From IMG/VR virus record IMGVR_UViG_3300037054_000148, positions 62,001 to 126,000 of that record: 64,000 nt of DNA, one strand, 5' to 3'. This document shows, in pieces, positions 11,128 to 31,770 of the stretch. Position numbers and translations under genes: made by a program. Under the pieces are notes generated by a model. It saw only the letters and a list, made by a program, of their open reading frames with translations. It did not search any database and was not told where the DNA came from. How positions within the stretch are numbered: position 1 is the first letter of the stretch; every line of letters starts with the position of its first letter.

Positions 11128-11136
11128 GGAGGCTTG

Positions 11137-12108
11137 ATGCTTATAAGTAAAACAGCCTCAGTGACAATTGTGGGTCGTAATAAGGAATTTTATAAAAAAT
11201 TGGGGTATGAGATTCCAGAGAGATTCTTAAAATCTGAATGGGCCTATACCACTCCAAGGGGGACTAAGATAGAAGTTAAGGTTTCTGATTTACAGGCTGG
11301 TTCAAGGGCTTTAGTCAACGTCAAGTGTGACTTTTGCGGAAAAATAATAGAAAAAAAGTACTATAAATATTTGCAAGGAAAAGACAATGGGGATGCTTGT
11401 GAAAAATGTAAGACTAAAAAAGCGGGGCAGGCGCTTCTTAAAAAATATGGAGCAAACAACTCTTTTGCAATTCCTGAAATTCAAGAGAAGGGGGATAGAA
11501 AGAAAAGGGTTCCTTTTGAGATTATAGAACAAGAATGTGTATCTAAGGGTTACAATTTGATAGCTTTAAGTTATTCTAAGACCGGGGCAAGGTTAGAGTA
11601 TATTTGCCAATTCCATCCCCTCATCTCTCAGTCTATTCTTTTGGGTGACTTTAGGAGGGGTCATGGGTGCCGCTGGTGCGGAAGAGAGAGATACAGTGGT
11701 GATAGATGTCATACGTGGGCAGGAGGGGTTACTGATATTCAAGCATACCTCAGAAAAAAATTGAAGCCTTTGGTATTAGCTAGGATATGCAGGGCAAATC
11801 ATATATGTGAACTTACTGGTAAAAAATATAGAATTCTGCAACTTCATCATATTGATGGATTTAATAAGTTGCTTTTAACTACCTTGGGTACACTTAATTT
11901 CACTATAAAAACTATAGGAAATTACTCAGAAGAGGAATTAACAGCTATTAAGGATGAGTTTATCCAACAGCATGAACTCTGCGAATCTGTTATTCTTGGA
12001 GATAATGTACACAAAAAATTCCACCATATTTATGGATTTAAGCATTTTACTGCAAACGATTATTATGAGTTTGCACTATTAGTTAAAAAAGGAGAGTTAG
12101 ATGTCTGA
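11137..12108 (+). CDS. Free-standing HNH-type homing endonuclease with Zn-ribbon domains
   Basis: GGAGG then ATG 11137; CDFC/CEKC and C..H...GHGCRWC motifs; CELTG...LHHI...HKKFHHIYG; visibly AT-rich relative to flanks. Confidence 0.75.
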   Translation: MLISKTASVTIVGRNKEFYKKLGYEIPERFLKSEWAYTTPRGTKIEVKVSDLQAGSRALVNVKCDFCGKIIEKKYYKYLQGKDNGDACEKCKTKKAGQALLKKYGANNSFAIPEIQEKGDRKKRVPFEIIEQECVSKGYNLIALSYSKTGARLEYICQFHPLISQSILLGDFRRGHGCRWCGRERYSGDRCHTWAGGVTDIQAYLRKKLKPLVLARICRANHICELTGKKYRILQLHHIDGFNKLLLTTLGTLNFTIKTIGNYSEEELTAIKDEFIQQHELCESVILGDNVHKKFHHIYGFKHFTANDYYEFALLVKKGELDV

Positions 12109-13096
12109 TTTTCCTGGTGGTGTTCAAGTCACTGGGTATATGAGCCCAAGTAGCCTTACGGATATGTACCCGACTCACGATTCCCAGTTCGGTTTGGGTG
12201 GTGGGCATGAAGTAGCGGGTGAGACTGCTCGTAATGCGATTCCCCCTAATCGTAGACGCGAGGGAATGACTTGCTATACGGCCAGTGACCAACAGACATG
12301 GCAGTTGCAGGGTGGTATTCTTGATATAAATTGGACCAATATCACTGGGAGTGGATCTTTCGTTGTTAATCAAACGGCCCATGGCTTTCTCGCAGGACAG
12401 TGGCTATTTTTTAATGGATCCATATGGGCTCTAGCATCCGCTACTGCTTTCGCCTCTTCCGAAGTTGAGGGGATGGTTACATCAGTTCCCTCGGCAAACC
12501 AGTTCATTCTAACAACTCAAGGTCATATTTCAGGTATGAGTGGGTTGGTCCCAGGTAATGTTTACTTTTTATCTGATACCACTCCGGGTCAGATGATGTT
12601 GAATCGCCCCGCATTACAAAGCGAAGTATCTAAACCCCTTTTTGTTGCAGATTCAGCTACTTCAGGTCTCATTAAAATTGAGGTGGGGGTCCAGGTAGGG
12701 GTGGGGTTTGCGTTGATGCAACCCTTCACCATCGTCTACACCACCGGATCTCTAGGGGTAGGACAGGGAGCCGTCTACACCGTCCCAATGCAGGCTTACC
12801 AGTTCCAGATCAGGAATGTCTATTCAAACGTAGCTTGTCGATTCCGAATATACGGGACACAACAATTAGCCACGATGGATTTTTCCCGACCCGCTTCTAT
12901 AAAAGCCACGGGAAATAACGGTCTTTACCTGGAAATGGTCATGATACCTGGGGTTTTGAGTTGGATCAATTCCCCGATGCCTACTCTGGCTAACCAGGAC
13001 TCTCCGGTAAACCAAAATATGTATATCTCCATTCAGAATACCGGGACGGTCCCAGCAGTTATAACAATTACAATGCAAACCCTAAAGTTGCAGTGA
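12101..13096 (+). CDS. Virion fibre/adaptor protein (RNAIP..RRREGM N-domain, QTAHGF domain, shared C-terminal domain)
   Basis: 331 aa; C-terminal ~125 aa is paralogous to the C-terminus of the 15429 collagen protein. Confidence 0.55.
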   Translation: MSDFPGGVQVTGYMSPSSLTDMYPTHDSQFGLGGGHEVAGETARNAIPPNRRREGMTCYTASDQQTWQLQGGILDINWTNITGSGSFVVNQTAHGFLAGQWLFFNGSIWALASATAFASSEVEGMVTSVPSANQFILTTQGHISGMSGLVPGNVYFLSDTTPGQMMLNRPALQSEVSKPLFVADSATSGLIKIEVGVQVGVGFALMQPFTIVYTTGSLGVGQGAVYTVPMQAYQFQIRNVYSNVACRFRIYGTQQLATMDFSRPASIKATGNNGLYLEMVMIPGVLSWINSPMPTLANQDSPVNQNMYISIQNTGTVPAVITITMQTLKLQ

Positions 13097-13105
13097 GGAG
13101 TAAGA

Positions 13106-15016
13106 ATGTCAACGTTTCTTGGATTTTTCTCATATCTGATGCCTATTGGCTCCACAGTGGCCGGTGTGCAGTCCATGTTGAAGTCCAATCTCCAAGCGTG
13201 TAGCTGGCAGGTTGTGCGCCAATCTGTCATTCCTAACTCCACCTTTGGGACGTTGGCAAACGCAGCCAACGCTTTTGATATGAATAGCACCACGCAAGCG
13301 GGTGGGGACAGCACCGGCAATATTGGTTGTGTGGCCCCCACGGCATTTCTCCCAACTGTGATGTACGTGCAGGTAAACAACGATGGGGGCGGCTCTGCTC
13401 CATTCAGCTTCGATCTTGAATACAGTATTAACAGCGGGTCCACTTGGCAAACGTTACAGACCTGGACAAATCAGAACGTCTGGACTAATATGGAGCGTAG
13501 AAGATACATTGTTTATGGAGCAACGGCTCAGACTTATTGGAGAATGAACGTCAGTGCCTCAAATGGTGCGAATACCTACATTACTGAATGGACTCTTGAA
13601 GACCAGAATGGTAATTGGCTGACAAACTCTACCTTCCTAGATATGATCCCTCCGACGACTGAGTTTATCGGGAATAGTGTGGCCAGAGATGTCCTTCGAA
13701 TCACTGTTAACTCCTCCTCCATCAACATGCTTTCGGTGTCAGAGCTTTTCACCCCCCTTCCCCAGATGTATATGTTCGATACGCCAGCGGCAGGGGCAGT
13801 CACTCTTTCAGTCCATATTGCCAACACGGTCTCCTTTGTCGGAACTGCTGGAAATACGGCTGAACAGAACGCCAGAGGGCTATATGAGGCTATAAAAAAT
13901 AGTGCTGATTCTGATTTCGCCCTTTGGAATTGGGTTTGGCTTACTTCTCTTCAAGGCACCGCAGGGGGTGGGTACATCCAGGCCGCACAGATAACTCCAG
14001 CCACCAATGTGGCAATAACCTCCACAAATATTACATCACATCTGAGGGGGAGCTACTGCAATGCCCCAATGGTTCAGGGTTCTCAATTAGCCCCAGTAAA
14101 TGGAGTTACAATTGACCTTATTAATGGGTTTGTATTCTATCTGCAAGTTTGTAGTCGCGGAATTGCATTAGCAATTAAAACAAATAGCTCATACGTCACT
14201 CCTGTCCACGCTTGTTATGGGGATAATCCCTCTGCTCTTGCACAAATACCCATTTCGGATATTTCAAGCATTCCTTGCACCCCCATTGATTTATTTGTTG
14301 GGACAGATGAGCCTACGAATCAGACTGGGGCCTACGGCTATACCTCGCACTGGTGGGGAGTTGCCAATGCCTGGAGCAATTCCACTGCCTATTGGGGTAT
14401 GGCACCTATTGATAATGGCCAGTACAACTCCGCATCCATTTGGTCCCACCATCAAGTTCCTGGGCAGATTCAAGATTTTGGAAATACAAGTTACGCAACT
14501 AACGGTATTGCTTCAATCAATATGTCCATGGACGGGGAAGGACTATTTAACGGAGGGGATTCTGGGTTAATTTATTCAGTGCATCGAATGTCTGCCAACC
14601 CCACTATTCAATACCCGAACATTGCCACTTCTTATAATGTTACAGCAGCTAGACTTACTGGCCCCGCCTACGCAAATCTAGACTGGTATAAGTTTGTCGG
14701 CTCCCTTTCTGACGAGCAAGTCATTTTTTCCCCAAGCACCGATTACACCACAGCCATCACAATTCAAGGGCTCCCCACTGATACGACGATAAACGTATCA
14801 GATGCGATTGGCTTCCCCACTACTGGTTTTCTGTTTATTGATGGGGAGATCATTCAATATAACGGGATTACTCCGACCGCATTTACAAGTTGCACGAGAG
14901 GGATGTATTTGACCAGCCCCCAAGGTCTCTTCCCTGGTACAACGGTTTTCATTGGGGGCTGGTATGTGAAGATTCAGAACGGTTTGCTCTTCGCCGGGTA
15001 CCAGTTACCTACCTAA
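13106..15016 (+). CDS. Virion protein with discoidin/F5-8C-like carbohydrate-binding domain
   Basis: 636 aa; NAFD...FDLEYS..GSTWQT...YWRMNV...ITEWTL; C-terminal TTINVSDAIGFPTTG.LFIDGEII.Y...CTRG phage motif; GAGGAG RBS. Confidence 0.55.
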   Translation: MSTFLGFFSYLMPIGSTVAGVQSMLKSNLQACSWQVVRQSVIPNSTFGTLANAANAFDMNSTTQAGGDSTGNIGCVAPTAFLPTVMYVQVNNDGGGSAPFSFDLEYSINSGSTWQTLQTWTNQNVWTNMERRRYIVYGATAQTYWRMNVSASNGANTYITEWTLEDQNGNWLTNSTFLDMIPPTTEFIGNSVARDVLRITVNSSSINMLSVSELFTPLPQMYMFDTPAAGAVTLSVHIANTVSFVGTAGNTAEQNARGLYEAIKNSADSDFALWNWVWLTSLQGTAGGGYIQAAQITPATNVAITSTNITSHLRGSYCNAPMVQGSQLAPVNGVTIDLINGFVFYLQVCSRGIALAIKTNSSYVTPVHACYGDNPSALAQIPISDISSIPCTPIDLFVGTDEPTNQTGAYGYTSHWWGVANAWSNSTAYWGMAPIDNGQYNSASIWSHHQVPGQIQDFGNTSYATNGIASINMSMDGEGLFNGGDSGLIYSVHRMSANPTIQYPNIATSYNVTAARLTGPAYANLDWYKFVGSLSDEQVIFSPSTDYTTAITIQGLPTDTTINVSDAIGFPTTGFLFIDGEIIQYNGITPTAFTSCTRGMYLTSPQGLFPGTTVFIGGWYVKIQNGLLFAGYQLPT

Positions 15017-15028
15017 CATGAGGTTCTG

Positions 15029-15376
15029 ATGGGTAATTCCCCTGCAAAAAATCTTCTTCCCCCAATCGGTTACCAAACCTTTTGGACGAACGGTCCGTCC
15101 TCTACCAACAATTTGATATCCCCTCCCAAAATGTTCGCGGCTTTTTCACCCGTTTTTCTGAACCCTCGAATATTAGTCCCTAGATTTGTATTAGTGACCG
15201 CCTTTACCTCTGCTCAGGCCCCCATTTTTCATAGCTATCTGAATGGGGCTGTTCCGGTGGGGGAGGTTGAATCCAGATGTGGGACGATTGGTGTGACCAC
15301 CTTTCCGGCTGTCTATCAGGCTCAAAATGGGGATATTCCAGCTTTTGGTCAGATTTACCCTAGAGGTTTAGATTAA
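15029..15376 (+). CDS. Small Pro-rich protein ending GQIYPR (c-family)
   Basis: 115 aa; GAGG RBS; C-terminal motif shared with 21660 and 23631 ORFs. Confidence 0.55.
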   Translation: MGNSPAKNLLPPIGYQTFWTNGPSSTNNLISPPKMFAAFSPVFLNPRILVPRFVLVTAFTSAQAPIFHSYLNGAVPVGEVESRCGTIGVTTFPAVYQAQNGDIPAFGQIYPRGLD

Positions 15377-15428: not shown

Positions 15429-19879
<4,451 letters not shown>

Positions 19880-19883
<4 letters not shown>

Positions 19884-20758
19884 CACTCTCACAATTCAAC
19901 ACCACAAATAATTATTCAACGGATGCTGCGTTTCAGACAGATTGCCTCGCAATTCATAACGCAATTCTTGCCGTAGGTCTGGTGCAGACTGCTGATGTGG
20001 GGCAGATCAGTTTTCCTTCTCTGACCCGATCAGTGGCCAATAACGCCTCTGGTTATATCATTTACGCTTTTTCGGATGCGTTACAGGCCACCTACCCAGT
20101 TTATATTAAAATTGAATATGGGGCGGGGACTGCAAATTATACCCAGCTAGGACTGTGGGTAACAGTTGGGTTTGCTACAAACGGAGCGGGGGTAATAACT
20201 GGAAATAGCCAGACCTCTAGAATTGCTCTACCCTCCGCTACGACTAATGTATTGACACCAGGAGGAGTCAGTGGTTCAACCAGTAGGCTTACTGCTTCCA
20301 TTATGCTGTTCAATGGCAGTCCTAATTACCTATCCATATGGTTCAGTGTGGAGAGGCTCCAGAGCACAGCCGGTGCGGATACGAGCCAAGGCATTGTATT
20401 GGCCTATGCACAGCATGGTGCAAGTGCCTCCCCAATCAGCGGGTCTCAAGTCGTCTACTACTCAGGTTACCAGCCCCCTCCCACCACAGCCCTCGGCTCA
20501 TTGATGCCCAATCAACCAGCGGGGACCACCTGGGTGGTGGGAGCGAATACCGGCACCGGCCCTATACTCCCCCTTGGGTTTGGTGCCCATCCGTGTATTC
20601 AAGGTGGGCTACTTTATTTCCAAGGAGACATTTCGGCCCAGTCCATCCCTTCTATTTCTGTTTATGGGACACCACACAACTATCTTGCACTCGGAGCAGC
20701 CCCCGCTAGTTTGACCAATTTCAATGCTTCGGCTGGTATTTTGGCGAGGTGGGATTAA
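19880..20758 (+). CDS. Virion (fibre-tip?) protein paralog A1
   Basis: 292 aa; [41 protein letters not shown], ends RWD. Confidence 0.7.
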
Positions 20759-21660
20759 TGACCCTATCACTCTACACCACAGCAGGAGTTCCTACCAACC
20801 CAACTGGGTGGAGAGCCACTTGTCTTCAGGTACACAACGCAATTCTTGCCGTAGGATTGATTCAGACCACAGATACGGGTCAGATCAATTTCGCTACCGT
20901 AACTCCCTCTGAATCTGGTAATGCTAAATCAGGGTATGCTATTTACTCATTTAATGATACTTATCAAGCCTCTTACCCTTGTTTTATTCGAATTGATTAT
21001 GGGGTAGACAACACGGGAATTAGTTTCTTTGGTATTGCCATATGGATGACGGTCGGAACATCCACAAACGGAGCCGGGGTAATCGGATCTATCACATCTC
21101 CAACAATTAATGTCAATATCCAGTTGTACAGTGAGGCCAATGCTGTGGGGGCGGCTAGCGGAACGTCCTCCAGATTGACTTTGGTGTCTAGGTATAACCA
21201 AACCGGATCAACTGGCATCTCCGCTCTCTCCGTGGAACGTATTCAGAGCACCGCAGGAGCCGACACTACTACAGGACTAGTGTTCACCTGGATAAAATTC
21301 AACGCTCTTCAGAACTCCTTCCCCTATCACGGGCAGCAGGTTCTTTATTTTTCTGGAATACAGCCAGCGGCTTTCTATAATAATAGCACATCAGGAGGCA
21401 TACCCCCCATTATTCTCCCTTTTAACACCACAGCTTGGGCCAATGGTAATTTCTGTTTCACCTCTCCCGTCTACCCGGTTGGTTATACTCTTCACCCCCC
21501 TATACAAGGACTCATGGTGGGCTTTCTGGCCGATTTTCCAGCCCCCAACTACCCCCTTCCCGTCTCTATATATGGGACCAGCCATCAATGGGCCGTGTTT
21601 GCTCAATCCTGGCTCTATCAGACCGCCTCAGTGGTCAATCTTCTAGTGAGGTGGGACTGA
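20758..21660 (+). CDS. Virion (fibre-tip?) protein paralog B1
   Basis: ATG 20758 overlaps the upstream TAA (TAATG); MTLSLY start matches paralogs; SYPCFIRIDYG, GLVFTW, GQQVLYF, ends RWD. Confidence 0.7.
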   Translation: MTLSLYTTAGVPTNPTGWRATCLQVHNAILAVGLIQTTDTGQINFATVTPSESGNAKSGYAIYSFNDTYQASYPCFIRIDYGVDNTGISFFGIAIWMTVGTSTNGAGVIGSITSPTINVNIQLYSEANAVGAASGTSSRLTLVSRYNQTGSTGISALSVERIQSTAGADTTTGLVFTWIKFNALQNSFPYHGQQVLYFSGIQPAAFYNNSTSGGIPPIILPFNTTAWANGNFCFTSPVYPVGYTLHPPIQGLMVGFLADFPAPNYPLPVSIYGTSHQWAVFAQSWLYQTASVVNLLVRWD

Positions 21661-21848
21661 TGGCCATAATCACTAATACCTCTGTCTTTAGTGTGGGGAT
21701 TGTGAGCCCATTTGACAAAATCATCTCAATCAGTGCCTTTCCCCCTATTATTCCTCCCGGTCTCACTAAAATATTATATGAATCTTCAGCTTGTAGCCAC
21801 CCCGCCCGACCCACTACAGGGGTCGTATGGCCCCGAAAAGCCCCTTAA
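21660..21848 (+). CDS. Small protein c1 ending RPTTGVVWPR
   Basis: 62 aa from ATG in TGATG overlap; MAII...SVG start like the 23631 ORF. Confidence 0.6.
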   Translation: MAIITNTSVFSVGIVSPFDKIISISAFPPIIPPGLTKILYESSACSHPARPTTGVVWPRKAP

Positions 21849-21857
21849 GGAGTTAGA

Positions 21858-22733
21858 ATGACACTCTCTACATGGACCAGCACTGTAAACGTCACCACTG
21901 ATGCACTATGGCGCACCGAAATGCAAGCTATCAGCACTGCTATTCTGGCTGTCGGCCTAGTCCAGACAGCCGATACGGGTCAGATCAATTTTGCGACCGC
22001 AGTGCGTTCTGGTGTGATTAACACGGCTGTCGGTTACCAGATCTTTACCTTCAATGACACCTATCAAGGCTCCTACCCCTGCTATATCAAGGTGGAATAC
22101 GGTTCCGGAGGCGTGGCCACCACTTCTTGTTCGTTATGGATCACCGTAGGCACCGGCACTAATGGTGCGGGTGTGATTACTCCCATTAGCACTTCTCGTT
22201 ATCAGATTCAGTGCAGCGCAGCTACGGCAGGCACCTTTATTTCTGGTGTGAGTGGCTCCACTAGTCGTTTGACACTCGGATGGTGTACGAATGGGGGCAC
22301 CACCGTTGCCAACTGGTTCACTGTGGAACGAATTCAGAATTCAGCCGGAGCAGATACGACCACTGGATTGGTGTTTATACAGGCTAGTCGTAATCTCGGA
22401 ATCACCGGCAATTTCGATCAGGTTATTTACTTCACCAATCCACAGCCCTATGCGTCTACGTCAGTCGGGACGATGATGATCAATCAACCTACCGCAACGA
22501 CCTGGGTGGTGGGAACGAATACCGGCACCGGCCCCATACTTCCTATAGGATTCGGGGTTCACCCAGCCGTACAGGGGGGCCTCACCTATTTCAATGCTGA
22601 CCTAACGGTTGGAAACCAGTTCACCGTAAGCATCTATGGGAATAATCATAACTTCCTGGCGATTGGGAGTGCAAATATCGGAACGCTCTATAATCTCCAG
22701 GCCACAGCCTCAATTCTGACAAGGTGGGATTAA
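21858..22733 (+). CDS. Virion (fibre-tip?) protein paralog A2
   Basis: 291 aa; TAAGGAG RBS; shares [29 protein letters not shown] with A1; ends RWD. Confidence 0.7.
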   Translation: MTLSTWTSTVNVTTDALWRTEMQAISTAILAVGLVQTADTGQINFATAVRSGVINTAVGYQIFTFNDTYQGSYPCYIKVEYGSGGVATTSCSLWITVGTGTNGAGVITPISTSRYQIQCSAATAGTFISGVSGSTSRLTLGWCTNGGTTVANWFTVERIQNSAGADTTTGLVFIQASRNLGITGNFDQVIYFTNPQPYASTSVGTMMINQPTATTWVVGTNTGTGPILPIGFGVHPAVQGGLTYFNADLTVGNQFTVSIYGNNHNFLAIGSANIGTLYNLQATASILTRWD

Positions 22734-22734
22734 A

Positions 22735-23631
22735 ATGACTTTGACAACATGGAATACTGTGGCGATTGCCTCCAACGTTCTCTTCGAAGCGTGGGCTCTT
22801 CAGGTGCATACTGCCATTCTTGCGACTGGACTGGTGCAGACGGCTGATACGGGACAGATTGTTTTTTCTACCGCAGTCTACCCAGGGGTAGCTAACACCA
22901 AAGCTGGCTATGCGATGTATGCGTTTAATGATCCCAACCAGGGCTCCTATCCCTGCTTCATCCGAGTAGACTTTGGCACCGCCTCCAGCGCCGGTTACCC
23001 ATCCTTATGGGTTCAGGTAGGCACCAGCACGAATGGAGCGGGTGTGATTGGAGGGATACAAACTTCTCAGATTCAGACTCAAGAAACTGGAGCAGGTTAT
23101 ATTTCGGGCATCAGTGGGTCTTCATCCCGATTGACCATGGCACTTAGCTATAATTACGGCCTACCTGCTTATGATGATTTTTTATCAATTGAGCGGATTC
23201 AAACCGTCTCTGGAACGGACAGCACCACCGGCTTGGTATTCACATGGGTGAAGAGTTATGTGGGATCCAACACTTATATCAGTAATGGTCAACAAGTCCT
23301 TTATTTCACCGGAACCCAACCAGTGGCCAACTATTCCAACTCCAGCGGAATTCCTACCATTTTCGCCAATACTTCCAATACGTCTACCACATGGACTAAT
23401 GGAGGGAACAACTCTTATGTTGGGTTGATCTACCCAGTTGGCCAGATCGTCCACTACCCAATTCAAGGGTTCATGGTGAATTATCCGGGGGATATCAGTC
23501 CTTTTTCAGTCGTCACGATCCCCATTTATGGGACAACCCATAGTTGGATTTCCATGCCAGTCGGATGTGCCACCAATCTGGTGACAAATGGAGGGGCCTC
23601 GCAAATGTCTCTCTTAGTTAGGTGGGATTAA
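22735..23631 (+). CDS. Virion (fibre-tip?) protein paralog B2
   Basis: 298 aa; SYPCFIRVDFG, GLVFTW, GQQVLYF, YPVG, PIQG shared with B1; ends RWD. Confidence 0.7.
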   Translation: MTLTTWNTVAIASNVLFEAWALQVHTAILATGLVQTADTGQIVFSTAVYPGVANTKAGYAMYAFNDPNQGSYPCFIRVDFGTASSAGYPSLWVQVGTSTNGAGVIGGIQTSQIQTQETGAGYISGISGSSSRLTMALSYNYGLPAYDDFLSIERIQTVSGTDSTTGLVFTWVKSYVGSNTYISNGQQVLYFTGTQPVANYSNSSGIPTIFANTSNTSTTWTNGGNNSYVGLIYPVGQIVHYPIQGFMVNYPGDISPFSVVTIPIYGTTHSWISMPVGCATNLVTNGGASQMSLLVRWD

Positions 23632-23972
23632 TGGCAGTTATTTCGAGTCAACAGGCTTACAGCGTTGGATTGGGAGGGGTTTACACCAAATCCTTCTCCT
23701 ATGTGAATGCTGTGATGACTCAAATACCTGTCTATTCGAATAGATTTATTCTTTTTAATCCAGGTTTCCTCCCCGCCGCTTCCCAGGTCTATCCCAAAGC
23801 CCTATTTGCTTCAACTGAGGTGGATACGATGACCTCACTCCTTTACAAACCTATTTTGAATGGGGGTACCATCGGGAATCTTTCTTTTGACGCAAAATAC
23901 ATCGCGGCGGGGCCGATTAGTGAACCGATTCGCCCTCTTTACGGAGTCCTCTGGCCGAAGGGCCATAAATAA
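23631..23972 (+). CDS. Small protein c2 ending RPLYGVLWPK
   Basis: 113 aa from ATG in TAATG overlap. Confidence 0.6.
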   Translation: MAVISSQQAYSVGLGGVYTKSFSYVNAVMTQIPVYSNRFILFNPGFLPAASQVYPKALFASTEVDTMTSLLYKPILNGGTIGNLSFDAKYIAAGPISEPIRPLYGVLWPKGHK

Positions 23973-24035: not shown

Positions 24036-26657
<2,622 letters not shown>

Positions 26658-26660
26658 AAT

Positions 26661-27251
26661 ATGAAAACACTTATCGGTCATGACATTGGGCAATACGAAT
26701 TCAACGCTGCGGCACGGACCATTACCTTCAATGGTCTCCCTCCGTTTGCACTAGAGCAAATTCTGCTCATAACCAATGAGAACCCAAATATCATCATATA
26801 CAATTTTGCAGATCCAACCCCTAATGGTGGAATCCTGGTGGGTAATGTTCTGACTCTAGACTTTAACACAACTTCGATGTTGAACACTGACCCATTGCAG
26901 ATTTACATCGACCTACCTACGACTGCTCCAAATGATAACGCTGCAATGAACGATGCTTACACCCATCTCCTACTTCAAAAAATTTGTGATTTGCTAGAAC
27001 CAATGGCCACACAGGATGTGGCACAGAGGCAGAGAGTCACAATTGATGCAATCACTGGAAGTCTCACCCTAGGCACTGTTAGCACAGTTACCGGTGTCAC
27101 TGCTGTTACCACCCTCAGCACCATTTCAAACCCAGTTCCAGTTGGCAACATTGCAACCCTAGGTGGGGGCAATCCTGAGTGGACTTTTATGGATATAACA
27201 AGACAATCCTATGCAATTGCAATTCGTTCCCAGTTACAGTTTGGAAATTGA
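26661..27251 (+). CDS. Virion fibre-associated protein
   Basis: 196 aa; YEFNAAARTITF...ILLITN...IIYNFAD motif recalled from phage structural proteins; TVSTVTGVTAVTTLST repeat. Confidence 0.55.
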   Translation: MKTLIGHDIGQYEFNAAARTITFNGLPPFALEQILLITNENPNIIIYNFADPTPNGGILVGNVLTLDFNTTSMLNTDPLQIYIDLPTTAPNDNAAMNDAYTHLLLQKICDLLEPMATQDVAQRQRVTIDAITGSLTLGTVSTVTGVTAVTTLSTISNPVPVGNIATLGGGNPEWTFMDITRQSYAIAIRSQLQFGN

Positions 27252-27253
27252 TC

Positions 27254-27781
27254 ATGGCTAGCGGAATCTACAGTATCACCATTAACGGCAAAACCTACAT
27301 AGGCTCTGCTATAAACTTTAAAAGTCGTTGGACTAACCATAAAAATCAGTTAAATAAAAATATACATAAAAATAAATATCTCCAAAATGCTTGGAATAAA
27401 TACAAAGAAATGGTATTTGAGATCATTTGCGAATGTCCAATTTCCTGTTTACTTGGTATGGAACAACATTATATCAATAAATATTTTGATAATCAAATAA
27501 ATTGTTATAATATGAACTCAATAGCTGGCTCAAGTTTAGGTGCTCATATATCTGAGGAAACTAAGCAAAAAATGAGAGAACTTAATAAAGGGAATAAACA
27601 TAGTTGTGGGCATAAAAATAGTTTAGGATACAAACATTCAGATGAGTTTAAATTAAAAATGTCAGAAAGAAAAAAAGGAAACACTTTTTGGCAAGGTAAA
27701 AAACACTCAGAGGAAACTAAGCAAAAAATGAAAGATACTATAAAAAGAAGTAAAGAACTTAAATACAGAAAGGATATATAA
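27254..27781 (+). CDS. GIY-YIG homing endonuclease with NUMOD3-type repeats
   Basis: MASGIY...YIGS...RW..H...H.NKYLQNAWNKY...EQ; HSEETKQKM; AT-rich; true start ATG 27254. Confidence 0.9.
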   Translation: MASGIYSITINGKTYIGSAINFKSRWTNHKNQLNKNIHKNKYLQNAWNKYKEMVFEIICECPISCLLGMEQHYINKYFDNQINCYNMNSIAGSSLGAHISEETKQKMRELNKGNKHSCGHKNSLGYKHSDEFKLKMSERKKGNTFWQGKKHSEETKQKMKDTIKRSKELKYRKDI

Positions 27782-27783
27782 AT

Positions 27784-30700
27784 ATGGCATCACTTATTAA
27801 CACTTTACGCAAGCAGGTTGACCTCCCTGTCTGGGAATGGCTTCGCTTCTCTCCAATCGCATCAGCAGTCCCATCTTGCACCTGCTCAGCTAATAATAGC
27901 CAGTACAACAAAATACAAGGTAGGTATATCTACTACTTGATTACTGCTGCTAACTTTTGGCGTTATGACACCTATACAGATACGTTTGAACAACTTCAAA
28001 CCCCACCCATTGCTCCAGCCACATGGGCGGATATAGAATTTGAACAGTGTCAGGGCATAGAAGGGTTTGTCTTGGGGGCTACCTCCAACACTCTGACTAT
28101 TCCAGCTTATTCTTCTGGCTCTTTTAGAGGTTATGATGTAAAAATTATTGGTGGGACCGGTATGGGGCAACGTAGAATCATTTCATACGTTAATGAGCCC
28201 GTGATCGTTGAAACTGGCGTCCCTACGGCTGTGAATAACGTTTTAGGTTCCTTCACCATTACTGATGCTACGAAAGCCTGGACTCCCAACCAATGGGCTG
28301 GCTACCAGCTTCGTATTTCGTATGGAACGGGTGTGGGTCAAGTTCGTAGAATTCTATACAATTCGGCTACGGTCCTAACCCTTGGTGACTCCACCATATC
28401 CGCTCAAAGCACTTGGTGTAATCCTAACATCACCTCACCAGCCATTGTCGCAACCGCTGGCTCCCAGTCTATTTATGTGATTGAGTCTTCGGTTGTCACA
28501 GTTGATTCACCATGGTTGATCACTCCTGATAAAACCTCTCAGTATATGGTTGAGTCAGGGGTCATTTCCTTATATTCTAGTGCAGCGGCCACTCCATTCT
28601 ATACTCTTCAATACTACGACATTGCTTCGGACCTTTGGTACATCAAAACTGCTAATACTCTAAACGTATCAGCAGTTGGAACTGATGGAAACTGTGACCA
28701 TGCTGGGTATGCGGCTGTTGTGTGGACCAGAGGAACCGCTACAGTCGCTGGAACCGCCACCACCCTAACTGACACTACTCAAAATTGGGCAGTGAATCAG
28801 TTCGCTGGGTACTACATTAACTTCACGGGTGGAACCGGTGAAGGGCAGTTATCAAAAATTGCCTCCAACACCAACACAGTTCTAACTTTTGCCACCGTCA
28901 CCACCCCACCCGACACTACCACCGATTATGTGATAGAAGGGTATGATTGCGGAACCCTCACCACCGGAGGCACCTCTACCCTAACCGATTCAACTAAAAC
29001 TTGGCCAGTAAACAGATGGGCCAATTTTATGGTTAAAATTCTCTTCGGGACAGGTAAGGGCCAGTATATGCAGATTGCATCAAATACTGCCACCACTTTA
29101 ACCCTAGTTAAACCCTTGGCAACCACCACAGATACCACATCTACTTATTCCATCCTCCCAGATGGTAACAAGACCTACCTGATGATTGGTGGGCAGGCCA
29201 CCACCTTCATGTACAACTACAGTGATGACCTTCTGACAGAAGGAAGATGGCAGGACTCAGGTATAGCTTGTAACGCAGTGGTGACTTATAGCACTATGCG
29301 CCCAATTGGCATTGCTTCAGCGGTTCACGCTACCACCAACGCCACCATCACCACTTCATTCCCACACTACCTAAAGGTAGGTATGTCGGTCACGGTAAAG
29401 GGGATGACAGATTCCAATTACAACACCACCGCCGTAATCAACAGTGTCCCCTCAACCACTCAGTTCACCTATACGATGGCCGGAACCCCCGCCGTCGATA
29501 CGGTGGCTGGAGTTCAAAACACCACAGTTCTCACCGATTACACAAAAAATTGGACAGTAAATCAGTGGGCCGGGTACCAGTGCTACATGACTGTTTCAGC
29601 CGTGACCGCTGCGACTGGTTTGGCCACCGGACAGGTGCTTCAGGTTTTGGCAAACACAGCCAACGCATTAATTTTTGTAGCGGCGGGTACCGCTCCCATC
29701 ACCGGCACCACTCGCTACATCCTCACCCCTAGAGCTACACCAGGGTTGATGGATTGTGGTCTTGCCACTGGCACTCAGTCAACCTCTCTATTAACAGACA
29801 CAACAAAAGCAAGCAATCTAAATGCTTCGATCTCGGCTGGAAGTAATACGCTGACGATCAACCCCGTCACCTTCACCGCTAGCTTCGCCAACAATCAAAT
29901 GACCCTTACGGTTCCTCCGGTAAATGGGGTTATCCAGGTTGGAAATCTTATCTCTGGTGTGGGCATTCTTCCCAATACCTACATCTCGGCACTGACTTCT
30001 GGAACCGCAAATACCCTTGGAGCCGTATATACATTGACTCCCCAAGGAACAATCGCTTCCGCAGGTGGTCAGTGCTCTCTGTCTGGCTCCTCCATGACCA
30101 TCACTACGGTCCCCACAACTGGTGTATACGCTCCTGGTCAGCTTATTTCAGGAACTGGTATTACTGCTGGAACAACCATAGTGTCCTTAACTTCTGGGAC
30201 AGCTAATACTATTGGTGCTGTGTATCTCTGTAGCGCAGCAATGACTACAGAATCGGCTGAATCGGTAATCTCTAACTTTGGAGTTGGCACGATAGCGGCT
30301 GAAACAGTGACCTGTTACCCACAGGGTCAGATCAACCCAGGAATGTTGGTTACATCTACTGGCTCTACGGGTGGGCAGATGTCATTTGCTACTAACGTAG
30401 CTACCATTACAACTGTTCCAACCTCTGGTTCAATTGCTATTGGTCAAACAATCCAGTCCGCTGGAGCAGCAAATGGAGCCGTTATTATTGCTCTTGCATC
30501 TGGAACTTTAAACGTTCTCGCATCTACATATACATTATCAACCTCACCAGGAACAATCGCTGCTCAGGCAGTAACAACTTCAAATCTTACCTTTGCAACA
30601 GGTGGCTCCGCATCATTCGCCACCAATGTGATGACTTTAACAGTTGCTCCTACTCTTGGGTCAATAGCTGTTGGTCAATATATTACTGGTGCTTCTGCAA

Positions 30701-31770
30701 GTATCCCAGCGGGGACGTACATTACTGGATTACTCACTGGTAACCTGAATGCTGTTTCATCCACATACTCTTTATCAACCTCACCAGGAACAATTGTTGC
30801 CGGAGCTATCACAGCTTCAAATGGAACCGGCTCATTTGGTGGTCAGGCGTCATTCGCAACTAACATAATGACTCTAACTACAATCCCAGCCGTGGGAGCC
30901 ATCACCATTGGAGCAATCGTAACGGCTGGAGCAGTGCCGGTAGGGACGACTATCACAGGTCTACTCACCGGGACACTTAACGCTGTGTCTTCCACTTATT
31001 CACTGTCTACTTACCCCGGCACAGTCGGTGCTGAAGCCATCACCACAAGCGCCATCCCAGTCGGCACGGTCATAACCCAACAGCTAACCTCTACGATGCC
31101 AAATGGTGCGAATGGTGGAACTGGGACATACCTCCTCTCCCTCCCCGCAGCCAATACCCTCACCTATGCTGCCCTTGATTATATGTGGGTTGTTAATGCG
31201 TTTGCTGGTCGTAAATGTAAGTTGATTGGAGCCACTGGTCAATCTCAGGAGTTCTCAGTAGGCTCTAATACCAATTGCACTATTGCAATGACAGCTATTA
31301 CAACCGCCCCAGTGACTCTTGCCACCTCATATGCACTACTCCAGCAGCCTGTTCGTGGAACTGGTTTTTGCATAGAAGGTATTTTTGGTTTATCGGATAC
31401 TAGTAACTCCGGAAAATGGTGGATTGCGGCACGTGCCGGGGCAGCAGTTGGGTTTGATAAACTAGATATTACGACTGATACATTTTACATGATACCAACC
31501 TCTCCACAGACGGAAACCCTGTCTACTGGCTCAATGTATGCTTATGACGGTCAGGATAGACTTTACTTCACCAAAGAAGCAACCCAGAGAATGTATTATA
31601 TGGACTTAAAGACAAACCATATTCATGGAGCGGGCATGTATCCCTATGCTGCCCCCACAGCTCTCCTTGGAAACCGAATGGAAATCTTTCAGACAAACGA
31701 TGGACTTAATTACCTCTGGATCAATCGGGAAACCAACTTGGAGAATTTTAGACAGCTTCTTTTCTACTAA
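27784..31770 (+). CDS. Large multi-repeat virion/fibre protein (propeller-like ends with nested beta-repeat insertions)
   Basis: 1328 aa; FWRYDTYTDTF and FDKLDITTDTF kelch-like ends; repeats TLTD.T..W..NQ.AG and SFATN..TLT...GT.I..L.SGT.N. Confidence 0.65.
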   Translation: MASLINTLRKQVDLPVWEWLRFSPIASAVPSCTCSANNSQYNKIQGRYIYYLITAANFWRYDTYTDTFEQLQTPPIAPATWADIEFEQCQGIEGFVLGATSNTLTIPAYSSGSFRGYDVKIIGGTGMGQRRIISYVNEPVIVETGVPTAVNNVLGSFTITDATKAWTPNQWAGYQLRISYGTGVGQVRRILYNSATVLTLGDSTISAQSTWCNPNITSPAIVATAGSQSIYVIESSVVTVDSPWLITPDKTSQYMVESGVISLYSSAAATPFYTLQYYDIASDLWYIKTANTLNVSAVGTDGNCDHAGYAAVVWTRGTATVAGTATTLTDTTQNWAVNQFAGYYINFTGGTGEGQLSKIASNTNTVLTFATVTTPPDTTTDYVIEGYDCGTLTTGGTSTLTDSTKTWPVNRWANFMVKILFGTGKGQYMQIASNTATTLTLVKPLATTTDTTSTYSILPDGNKTYLMIGGQATTFMYNYSDDLLTEGRWQDSGIACNAVVTYSTMRPIGIASAVHATTNATITTSFPHYLKVGMSVTVKGMTDSNYNTTAVINSVPSTTQFTYTMAGTPAVDTVAGVQNTTVLTDYTKNWTVNQWAGYQCYMTVSAVTAATGLATGQVLQVLANTANALIFVAAGTAPITGTTRYILTPRATPGLMDCGLATGTQSTSLLTDTTKASNLNASISAGSNTLTINPVTFTASFANNQMTLTVPPVNGVIQVGNLISGVGILPNTYISALTSGTANTLGAVYTLTPQGTIASAGGQCSLSGSSMTITTVPTTGVYAPGQLISGTGITAGTTIVSLTSGTANTIGAVYLCSAAMTTESAESVISNFGVGTIAAETVTCYPQGQINPGMLVTSTGSTGGQMSFATNVATITTVPTSGSIAIGQTIQSAGAANGAVIIALASGTLNVLASTYTLSTSPGTIAAQAVTTSNLTFATGGSASFATNVMTLTVAPTLGSIAVGQYITGASASIPAGTYITGLLTGNLNAVSSTYSLSTSPGTIVAGAITASNGTGSFGGQASFATNIMTLTTIPAVGAITIGAIVTAGAVPVGTTITGLLTGTLNAVSSTYSLSTYPGTVGAEAITTSAIPVGTVITQQLTSTMPNGANGGTGTYLLSLPAANTLTYAALDYMWVVNAFAGRKCKLIGATGQSQEFSVGSNTNCTIAMTAITTAPVTLATSYALLQQPVRGTGFCIEGIFGLSDTSNSGKWWIAARAGAAVGFDKLDITTDTFYMIPTSPQTETLSTGSMYAYDGQDRLYFTKEATQRMYYMDLKTNHIHGAGMYPYAAPTALLGNRMEIFQTNDGLNYLWINRETNLENFRQLLFY

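What the first reader, a model, noticed from the sequence alone, without database searches (positions are those of the whole stretch)
19880..23972. Tandemly duplicated three-gene cassette A-B-c / A'-B'-c' of diverged paralogs
Seen: four ~295 aa paralogs alternate in two subtypes. A1/A2 share [26 protein letters not shown] (near-identical DNA around 20527-20567 and 22499-22539); B1/B2 share SYPCFIR.D, GLVFTW, GQQVLYF, YPVG, PIQG. Each A-B pair is followed by a small c gene. Conserved scaffolds carry variable loops. Inference: alternative hetero-oligomeric fibre tips or receptor-binding heads, expandable by recombination.
Basis: partly seen in the sequence, partly recalled or inferred. Interest (0 to 1): 0.6.

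Follow-up and report, generated by a model that had tools for sequence, protein, structure and literature searches.

The report
Duplicated two-protein tail-fibre head cassette

Summary
Window 19880-23972 holds A1-B1-c1 / A2-B2-c2, all translationally coupled, lying between two collagen-like fibre genes. The four ~295-aa proteins are paralogs (37-51% identity). B1+B2 form a strongly supported clade. A1+A2 are not resolved as a clade, but that grouping is not rejected (AU p 0.39).

A/B have no Pfam or PHROG family. An AlphaFold model (pLDDT 90) matches the JBD30 baseplate chains gp47/gp48 over its whole length (Z 15.9, next hit 6.8). In JBD30 these two similar-fold proteins heterodimerise and stack into the lateral, pilus-binding tail fibres.

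The family has at least 421 clusters, all named 'hypothetical'. It sits in a fixed three-part module:
- an upstream fibre or tail protein ending in a conserved ~130-aa C-terminal domain;
- 1-4 family genes;
- a small protein ending in a GQLWPRG-like motif.

One relative (L081) has a single A-B-c unit; three others keep the double unit. dN/dS is 0.04-0.19.

The best reading is two stable A-B heterodimeric adhesin sets mounted on fibres. 'Expandable by recombination' is not supported for this lineage. I rate it a new variant of a known kind, interest about 0.5.

The parts
12101..13096 (+). 331-aa protein whose last ~130 residues (12695-13093) are the same conserved C-terminal domain ('cd1') as in fibre1
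   Evidence: jackhmmer and HMM hits; alignment A6; translation
13106..15016 (+). 636-aa protein in the 'head' position after the first cd1 protein; likely a tail or receptor-binding protein
   Evidence: Weak PHROG tail and baseplate-wedge hits. 41% identical (E 2e-157) to the 630-aa protein in the same position in L027. No similarity to A/B.
15029..15376 (+). c0: third small c-like gene (115 aa), ending in FGQIYPRGLD
   Evidence: Translation. One of only three ORFs in the 313.6-kb genome with the C-terminal motif. Homolog in L027.
15429..19883 (+). Fibre1: 1484-aa collagen-like fibre (G-X-Y runs from residue 12 to 1072 and 1298-1357) ending in the cd1 domain (19476-19880)
   Evidence: Pfam PF01391 1.3e-84; PHROG tail fibre families; layout; phrog_15343 on the C-terminus; cd1 alignment A6
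19880..20758 (+). A1, 292 aa, family member of A type
20758..21660 (+). B1, 300 aa from the ATG at 20758 (the ORF opens with GTG at 20749), family member of B type
21660..21848 (+). c1, 62 aa; keeps the N- and C-terminal modules of c2 and ends in TTGVVWPRKAP. Conserved at 84% identity, dN/dS 0.19, in L073.
21858..22733 (+). A2, 291 aa, family member of A type. AF2 model pLDDT 90.3, fold of JBD30 gp47/gp48.
22735..23631 (+). B2, 298 aa, family member of B type
23631..23972 (+). c2, 113 aa, ends in LYGVLWPKGHK. Its length varies from 77 to 132 aa among close relatives by in-frame indels.
24036..26657 (+). Fibre2: 873-aa protein, almost entirely collagen-like, without a cd1 domain and with a short hydrophobic C-terminal tail
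   Evidence: Pfam PF01391 3.9e-72; layout; no cd1 hit

Best explanation
A and B are virion tail-fibre-associated proteins. They belong to a large, unannotated phage family that has the complete fold of JBD30 gp47/gp48.

In this lineage one ancestral gene duplicated into an A type (ancestral-like) and a B type (derived). The translationally coupled A-B-c unit was then duplicated in tandem, and all six genes have since been kept under purifying selection.

By analogy with JBD30, each A most likely pairs with its neighbouring B as a heterodimer. These dimers assemble on or next to the conserved C-terminal knob (cd1) of the fibre encoded just upstream. The small c protein, with its GQLWPRG-like C-terminus, would act as an assembly or locking partner. 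The conserved N-terminal ~110 residues of A/B would then be the docking side, and the variable C-terminal two thirds the host-facing side.

Two diverged A-B sets, plus a third head (the 636-aa protein with c0), would give the jumbo phage several fixed receptor specificities rather than a shuffling system.

Shown: paralogy, fold, module synteny, purifying selection, and copy-number variation among relatives. Inferred: heterodimerisation, contact with cd1 and c, virion location, and adhesin function.
For: Fold:
- The AF2 model of A2 has pLDDT 90.3 and pTM 0.91.
- VIA-align gives Z 15.9 with 255 of 291 residues aligned to 8rk3 (JBD30 baseplate); the next hit is Z 6.8.
- The top Foldseek PDB hits are 8rk3_G and 8rk3_K, the only PDB rows with probability near 1 (E 2e-3 and 9e-3, above the tool's 0.001 line).
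- JBD30 gp47/gp48 have similar folds, form heterodimers, and three heterodimers make one pilus-binding fibre (PMC11445458). Lydia gp67/68 are read the same way (PMC11946847).
- BFVD matches include proteins named 'virion structural protein' and tandem sets in other large phages.

Context:
- Family genes lie directly after tail-fibre, gpJ-like or tape-measure genes in many contigs.
- The cd1 domain ends the upstream ORF, with the first family gene starting close to that ORF's end (mostly within 5 nt), in 21 loci whatever that ORF's length or N-terminal part.
- The type of c co-varies with the type of upstream C-terminal domain: cd1 loci split 11/1/9 and cd2 loci 0/17/4 (motif 1 / motif 2 / none).
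- In this genome the c motif occurs only in c0, c1 and c2, and cd1 occurs only twice, all within 12 kb.

Evolution:
- Trees; single-unit relative L081; double unit kept in L006, L073 and L080.
- dN/dS 0.04-0.19.

Expression hint: short contigs from metatranscriptome libraries lie on A1, B1, A2, B2 and c2.
Against: - There is no sequence-level link to JBD30 gp47/gp48. hhalign probability is under 1%, they belong to phrog_687, and A/B hit no PHROG.
- No complex prediction could be run.
- The c2 model failed (pLDDT 35), so nothing structural supports a role for c.
- Most loci (49 of 69) carry a single family gene, so a paralogous partner is not obligatory.
- In JBD30 these proteins build the fibre themselves and attach to the baseplate, not to another fibre.
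- Fibre1 has almost no non-collagen N-terminus, so which end faces the virion is unknown.
- No virion proteomics exist for any member; the Tunturi paper has none.
- RNA-library contigs may be DNA carry-over.
Confidence: 0.55

Rival explanations
1. A/B build their own short lateral arms on the baseplate, exactly as JBD30 gp47/gp48 do, independent of the collagen fibres. On this reading the adjacency to the fibre gene is only tail-module synteny.
For: In JBD30 the arms are made only of gp47/gp48 and dock on Dit and the upper baseplate protein. In L056 the family gene follows a tape-measure gene and one more ORF, a JBD30-like position.
Against: The tight, repeated coupling to one specific C-terminal domain of the upstream protein, across very different upstream proteins, is hard to explain by synteny alone. 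So is the co-variation of the c type with that domain type.
Confidence: 0.22
2. A/B and/or c are non-structural assembly chaperones for the collagen-like fibres and are absent from the mature virion.
For: Genes just downstream of fibre genes are often chaperones (established knowledge for lambda Tfa and T4 gp38/gp57). c is small and predicted disordered on its own.
Against: The only solved structure with this fold is a virion component. Some BFVD look-alikes are named virion structural proteins. There is no hit to any chaperone family in Pfam or PHROGs. For c alone this rival remains quite possible.
Confidence: 0.12
3. The cassettes are an actively recombining or switching set of alternative receptor-binding heads.
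For: Copy number varies from 1 to 4 among lineages, with independent expansions in Tunturi_5, L024, L009, L036 and L055. A 42-nt stretch of A1/A2 is unusually alike at synonymous sites in this lineage but less so in L073, a possible short conversion tract. c2 shows in-frame length variants.
Against: Paralog nt identity is ~50%. The identical six-gene order is kept in diverged relatives. Purifying selection is strong. Contigs from an independent peat metagenome show no recombinant or deletion joints between the paralogs. No inverted repeats or invertase were seen (direct repeats only).
Confidence: 0.08
4. A/B are enzymes (hydrolases acting on surface polymers) rather than adhesins.
For: The JBD30 authors state that gp47 was classified in the nitrilase superfamily.
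Against: JBD30 gp47/gp48 hit no Pfam family here, nor do A/B. No catalytic motif is conserved: the only invariant columns family-wide are one D and one Q in the N-terminal motif.
Confidence: 0.03

Closest known systems
Pseudomonas phage JBD30 gp47/gp48 tail-fibre-forming proteins (PDB 8rk3; phrog_687)
   Same: - Whole-length fold (Z 15.9, 255 residues aligned) and a similar size (~300 aa).
- Two adjacent paralogs of similar fold.
- Located in the tail module.
   Different: - No detectable sequence similarity, and a different PHROG status.
- Here the genes follow a collagen-like fibre that ends in a conserved C-terminal domain, and they are followed by a small c gene. JBD30 has neither: its gp47/48 lie between the tape-measure and Dit genes.
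- Here the pair is duplicated, and the phage is a jumbo phage whose nearest isolate, Tunturi_5, is a myovirus.
Pseudomonas phage Lydia gp67/gp68 (Mesyanzhinovviridae)
   Same: Two tail-fibre proteins of similar fold, proposed to form JBD30-like heterodimers (PMC11946847).
   Different: That relationship was also only predicted. Lydia is a siphophage of a pilus-dependent group. Not compared directly here.
Tunturiibacter phage Tunturi_5 gp29-gp34 (PP885688)
   Same: - The only isolate in the phage collection with family members.
- A jumbo phage of ~309 kb.
- Same gene order: fibre gp29 ending in cd1, then four ~285-aa paralogs, then the small gp34 ending in PTTGQLFPLGRN.
   Different: - Its four paralogs form their own clade, an independent expansion.
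- One c gene serves all four.
- Identity to A2 is only 28%.
- All are annotated as hypothetical.
Side tail fibre plus downstream assembly protein (lambda Stf/Tfa, T4 gp37/gp38)
   Same: A fibre gene followed by small or medium genes needed at the fibre's distal end (established knowledge).
   Different: No sequence or fold relation was found. The A/B fold is that of a structural fibre subunit.

Membership tests
JBD30 gp47/gp48-like tail-fibre-forming proteins (phrog_687) | Shared three-dimensional fold over the whole protein | tested here: met
   Z 15.9, rmsd 3.8 A, 255/291 residues, next hit Z 6.8. Foldseek's top two PDB hits are 8rk3_G and 8rk3_K, at E 2e-3 and 9e-3 (none under the tool's 0.001 line).
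JBD30 gp47/gp48-like tail-fibre-forming proteins (phrog_687) | Sequence membership in phrog_687, or profile similarity to gp47/gp48 | tested here: not met
   A/B hit no PHROG at E<=0.1. gp47/gp48 hit phrog_687 at about 1e-100. hhalign of the family profile against gp47 and gp48 gives probability under 1%.
JBD30 gp47/gp48-like tail-fibre-forming proteins (phrog_687) | Two adjacent paralogs of similar fold | tested here: met
   A-B pairs are adjacent and coupled. B-position genes form one clade across four phages. Across the wider family, however, 49 of 69 loci have one copy.
JBD30 gp47/gp48-like tail-fibre-forming proteins (phrog_687) | Heterodimer formation and stacking into a fibre | not testable with these tools
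JBD30 gp47/gp48-like tail-fibre-forming proteins (phrog_687) | Presence in the virion; binding of type IV pili | not tested
   No proteomics exist for any member. This needs experiments.
Collagen-like phage tail fibres (Pfam PF01391), for the flanking genes | Long G-X-Y repeat tracts | tested here: met
   PF01391 at 1.3e-84 and 3.9e-72. 1029 and 795 residues lie in G-X-Y runs.
Known tail-fibre assembly chaperones (Pfam/PHROG families), for c and A/B | A hit to any such family | tested here: not met
   No Pfam or PHROG hits for c1, c2 or eight other c-like proteins; one (Tunturi_5 gp34) has only a marginal hit (E 0.056) to an unknown-function PHROG.
Proposed module 'fibre C-terminal domain - family gene(s) - small c protein' | The upstream ORF ends in the cd1 (or cd2) domain immediately before the first family gene | tested here: met
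   Window: the cd1 domain is at 19476-19880 and A1 starts at 19880. 21 loci are of cd1 type and 21 of cd2 type.
Proposed module 'fibre C-terminal domain - family gene(s) - small c protein' | A small ORF with the matching C-terminal motif directly after the last family gene | tested here: met
   c1 and c2 carry motif 1. Overall, 14 of 67 downstream small ORFs carry it, against 15 of 3619 small ORFs in the loci. The motif type matches the upstream domain type. The motif pattern was derived after seeing the data.

The most novel reading that the evidence does not exclude
The cassette is one instance of a hitherto undescribed, widespread three-component phage adhesion module. A trimeric fibre ends in a dedicated ~130-aa knob (cd1 or cd2). 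One or more exchangeable head proteins dock on it, either the JBD30-fold family or the unrelated 636-aa type. A small, intrinsically unfolded 'clasp' protein with a conserved C-terminal aromatic-proline motif (GQLWPRG-like) locks the head to the knob. In this jumbo phage, three heads (636-aa with c0, A1B1 with c1, A2B2 with c2) are distributed over two cd1 fibres, giving several receptor specificities.
Probability: 0.22. Interest if true: 0.7.

Novelty: new variant of a known kind. Interest (0 to 1): 0.5.

Why it matters
- It gives a structural and functional handle (JBD30-type paired fibre subunits) to a large family of phage proteins with at least 421 clusters, all 'hypothetical', with no Pfam or PHROG. 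The family is common in soil and peat viromes, including the only cultured jumbo phage of Acidobacteriota.
- It defines a recurring three-part gene module that could serve to locate host-recognition loci in uncultured phages.
- It shows how such a module grows by duplication: one gene, then an A/B pair, then a doubled A-B-c unit.
- The Tunturi_5 / Tunturiibacter pair makes the predictions testable in the laboratory.

Tried and rejected
There is therefore no verdict on binding.
- The AF2 model of c2 from a 9-sequence alignment failed (pLDDT 35), so its fold cannot be stated.
- Fold search with the 'atlas' library was unavailable.
- Pfam and PHROGs gave nothing for A, B or c. Pfam also gave nothing for ten neighbouring genes or for the cd1 domain.
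- PDB sequence/profile searches for the family and for cd1 found nothing meaningful.
- blastn against the phage collection found no match.
- The ESM Atlas feature search gave only unnamed viral clusters for A2 and nothing for c2.
- c2 and Tunturi_5 gp34 show no BLASTP similarity. Their link rests on position and the short C-terminal motif only.
- The idea that conserved strands carry variable loops was checked and not borne out.
- Laying contigs of four runs (two DNA, two RNA libraries) showed no recombinant or deletion joints between the paralogs. One 120-nt RNA-library contig 'goes back 90' within A1 and is probably an assembly artefact. These are contigs, which drop rare variants.
- The 636-aa neighbour is not a diverged family member.
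- No other genetic code was used.
Full report
**What the window is.** The window is bases 62001-126000 of a 313.6-kb IMG/VR virus record, estimated complete. The same DNA occurs in many peat metagenomes from different studies. The only related isolate in the phage collection is the 309-kb jumbo myovirus Tunturiibacter phage Tunturi_5, at 28% identity to A2 (PMC11924767).

**The observation.**
- Table-11 ORFs give the order fibre1 (15429-19883, 1484 aa), A1, B1, c1, A2, B2, c2, fibre2 (24036-26657, 873 aa), all on the + strand.
- Both fibres are collagen-like (Pfam PF01391 at 1e-84 and 4e-72). They have 1029 and 795 residues in G-X-Y runs.
- Gene junctions overlap by one or four bases: fibre1/A1 as ATGA, A1/B1 and B2/c2 as TAATG, B1/c1 as TGATG.
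- The four ~295-aa proteins align end to end with 72 invariant columns. Identities are A1-A2 51%, B1-B2 46% and A-B 37-44%. Nucleotide identity is only 45-52%.
- Informative sites favour AA|BB 16: 6: 5, and B1/B2 share insertions.
In it, 10 of 12 synonymous codons match, against 36% gene-wide. The same stretch is less alike between A1 and A2 of the relative L073. This hints at a short conversion tract, but the window was chosen after the fact.
- c1 (62 aa) matches c2 (113 aa) at the N-terminus and at the C-terminus, and lacks the middle.

**Phylogeny.**
- In a 55-protein tree the four paralogs, with their 98-99% identical orthologs in L006, form one clade (99/98). It is sister to the single-copy gene of L007 (100/100).
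- B1+B2 group at 100/99. A2 joins the B clade only weakly (85/45).
- The AU test does not reject A1+A2 as a clade (p 0.39).
- With more relatives, all genes in the B position (window, L073, L080, L081) form one clade (100/100). A-position genes form an unresolved basal group next to the outgroup.
- So A is the ancestral-like type and B the derived type, and the A/B split predates these phages.
- Tunturi_5's four paralogs form their own clade, an independent expansion.

**Copy number in relatives.**
- L006 (98% identical), L073 (A/B 80-91%, c 65-84% identical) and L080 all have A-B-c-A'-B'-c'. In L080 the second c is an uncalled 69-aa ORF.
- L081 has fibre - A - B - c(62 aa) - 1023-aa gene, that is, one unit. 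Its A and B are nearest to A2 and B2.
- This fits a tandem duplication of the whole unit, or a loss in L081.
- Against L073, dN/dS is 0.04-0.05 for B1, A2 and B2 and 0.19 for c1. dS is near or beyond saturation, and for A1 and c2 it could not be computed. All six genes are therefore real and constrained, including the 62-aa c1.
- Contigs of an independent peat metagenome are colinear over the whole region, with 15 point differences and no joints. Short contigs from metatranscriptome libraries lie on A1, B1, A2, B2 and c2, which is a weak sign of expression.

**What A and B are.**
- They hit no Pfam or PHROG family.
- A profile word-search finds at least 421 clusters. All are 'hypothetical' with no Pfam domain.
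- A scan of viral contigs gives 67 loci with 1-4 tandem copies: 49 loci with one copy, 12 with two, 4 with three and 4 with four.
- An AF2 model of A2 from a 46-sequence alignment is confident (pLDDT 90.3, pTM 0.91).
- Its only strong match among solved structures is the JBD30 baseplate entry 8rk3. VIA-align gives Z 15.9 with 255 of 291 residues aligned, against Z 6.8 for the next hit. Foldseek's top two hits are chains G and K of the same entry, at E 2e-3 and 9e-3, just above the tool's 0.001 line.
- These chains are gp47 (318 aa) and gp48 (307 aa).
- The JBD30 paper describes them as proteins of similar fold that form heterodimers. Three heterodimers make each bent lateral tail fibre, which embraces the type IV pilus (PMC11445458).
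- Phage Lydia is predicted to do the same with gp67/gp68 (PMC11946847).
- The sequence link is absent. gp47/gp48 are in phrog_687, and the family profile does not align to them.
- BFVD look-alikes include proteins named virion structural protein (FoX4, KL1). They also include tandem or multiple copies in large phages (Atu_ph07, A7KUT2-4, phage G).

**The wider module, which goes beyond the finding.**
- Family genes sit directly after tail-fibre, gpJ-like or tape-measure genes.
- The last ~135 residues of fibre1 are a conserved domain (here 'cd1'; phrog_15343/9627, with no Pfam or PDB match). It forms the extreme C-terminus of the ORF immediately upstream of the first family gene (mostly ending within 5 nt of its start) in 21 loci. 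That ORF can be 178 or 2200 aa long, and collagen-like or not.
- Another 21 loci have a different C-terminal domain in the same place ('cd2'; phrog_35197/10330).
- Directly after the last family gene there is usually a small ORF.
  - 14 of 67 such ORFs end in a motif like PTTGQLWPRG, against 15 of 3619 small ORFs overall. These include Tunturi_5 gp34, which has no BLAST similarity to c2.
  - A second class ends in G-Y/F-A or PIVG.
- The motif class follows the upstream domain class. cd1 loci split 11/1/9 and cd2 loci 0/17/4 for motif 1 / motif 2 / none.
- The motif pattern was written after seeing the data, and the three parts also co-diverge with the family tree. This therefore shows a block that has been kept together for a long time. 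It does not show direct contact.
- In this genome (3644 six-frame ORFs) the motif occurs only three times: in c1, c2 and a third gene, c0 (15029-15376). cd1 occurs only twice: in fibre1 and in the 331-aa ORF 12101-13096.
- c0 follows a 636-aa protein unrelated to A/B. L027 has the same order: cd1 protein, 630-aa homolog (41% identical), c0-like gene, family gene, c.
- The region 12.1-26.7 kb therefore looks like one host-recognition locus with three 'head + c' units.

**How it most likely works.**
- Shown: paralogy, fold, synteny, purifying selection.
- Inferred: A and B pair as JBD30-like heterodimers; they dock on or beside the cd1 knob of the fibre; c helps assembly or locks the complex.
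- The conserved N-terminal ~110 residues would be the docking side and the variable remainder the host-facing side.
The c2 fold failed.
- Rivals are independent JBD30-like arms, chaperones absent from the virion, an actively recombining set, and enzymes. They are weighed in the fields above.

**Verdict.** The paired similar-fold fibre subunits are a known kind. The sequence family, its fixed association with a fibre C-terminal domain and a small motif-bearing protein, and the doubled unit are new variants of that kind.

Noticed in passing
window 27179-27781 (between 26661-27251 and 27784-31770): A GIY-YIG homing-endonuclease gene (phrog_314 at 2e-24) sits between a 196-aa and a 1328-aa structural-looking gene. 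The relative L073 lacks it (its 177-aa and 1254-aa genes are adjacent). L075 has it (GIY-YIG plus NUMOD3).
   Followed up: partly
window 15429-19883 and 24036-26657; L006, L073, L075, L081: The collagen-like fibres differ greatly in length between close relatives. Fibre1 is 1484 aa here and about 2190 aa in the 98%-identical L006. Fibre2 is 873 aa here, against 747 (L006), 741 (L075), 1195 (L073) and 1023 (L081).
   Followed up: partly
window 23631-23972 and proteins P0007-P0013: c2 shows in-frame length variants among near-identical strains (77, 99, 113 and 132 aa). One variant has a 19-aa tandem repeat unit, and others have internal deletions.
   Followed up: partly
window 15029-15376, 13106-15016, 12101-13096: A third small c-like gene (c0) follows a 636-aa protein, which in turn follows a 331-aa protein carrying the same C-terminal domain as fibre1. 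The same order is seen in L027.
   Followed up: yes
window 26500-26657 (C-terminus of fibre2): Fibre2 ends in a short hydrophobic stretch after a GDVLTK...DYDASW segment. It lacks the cd1 domain, so its attachment or partner is unclear.
   Followed up: no
window 11134-12108: A 324-aa ORF matches phrog_5104 (unknown function, 2.5e-21). It also has a weak homing-endonuclease hit.
   Followed up: no
L082/L083 (P0120): A family member occurs in a Pseudomonas aeruginosa assembly, next to P22-type portal and SU10-type adaptor genes. The family is therefore not limited to soil jumbo phages or to long-tailed phages.
   Followed up: no
window 20460-20549, run X16: One 120-nt contig from an RNA library maps as two overlapping 60-nt pieces ('goes back 90') inside A1. 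This is probably an assembly artefact.
   Followed up: no
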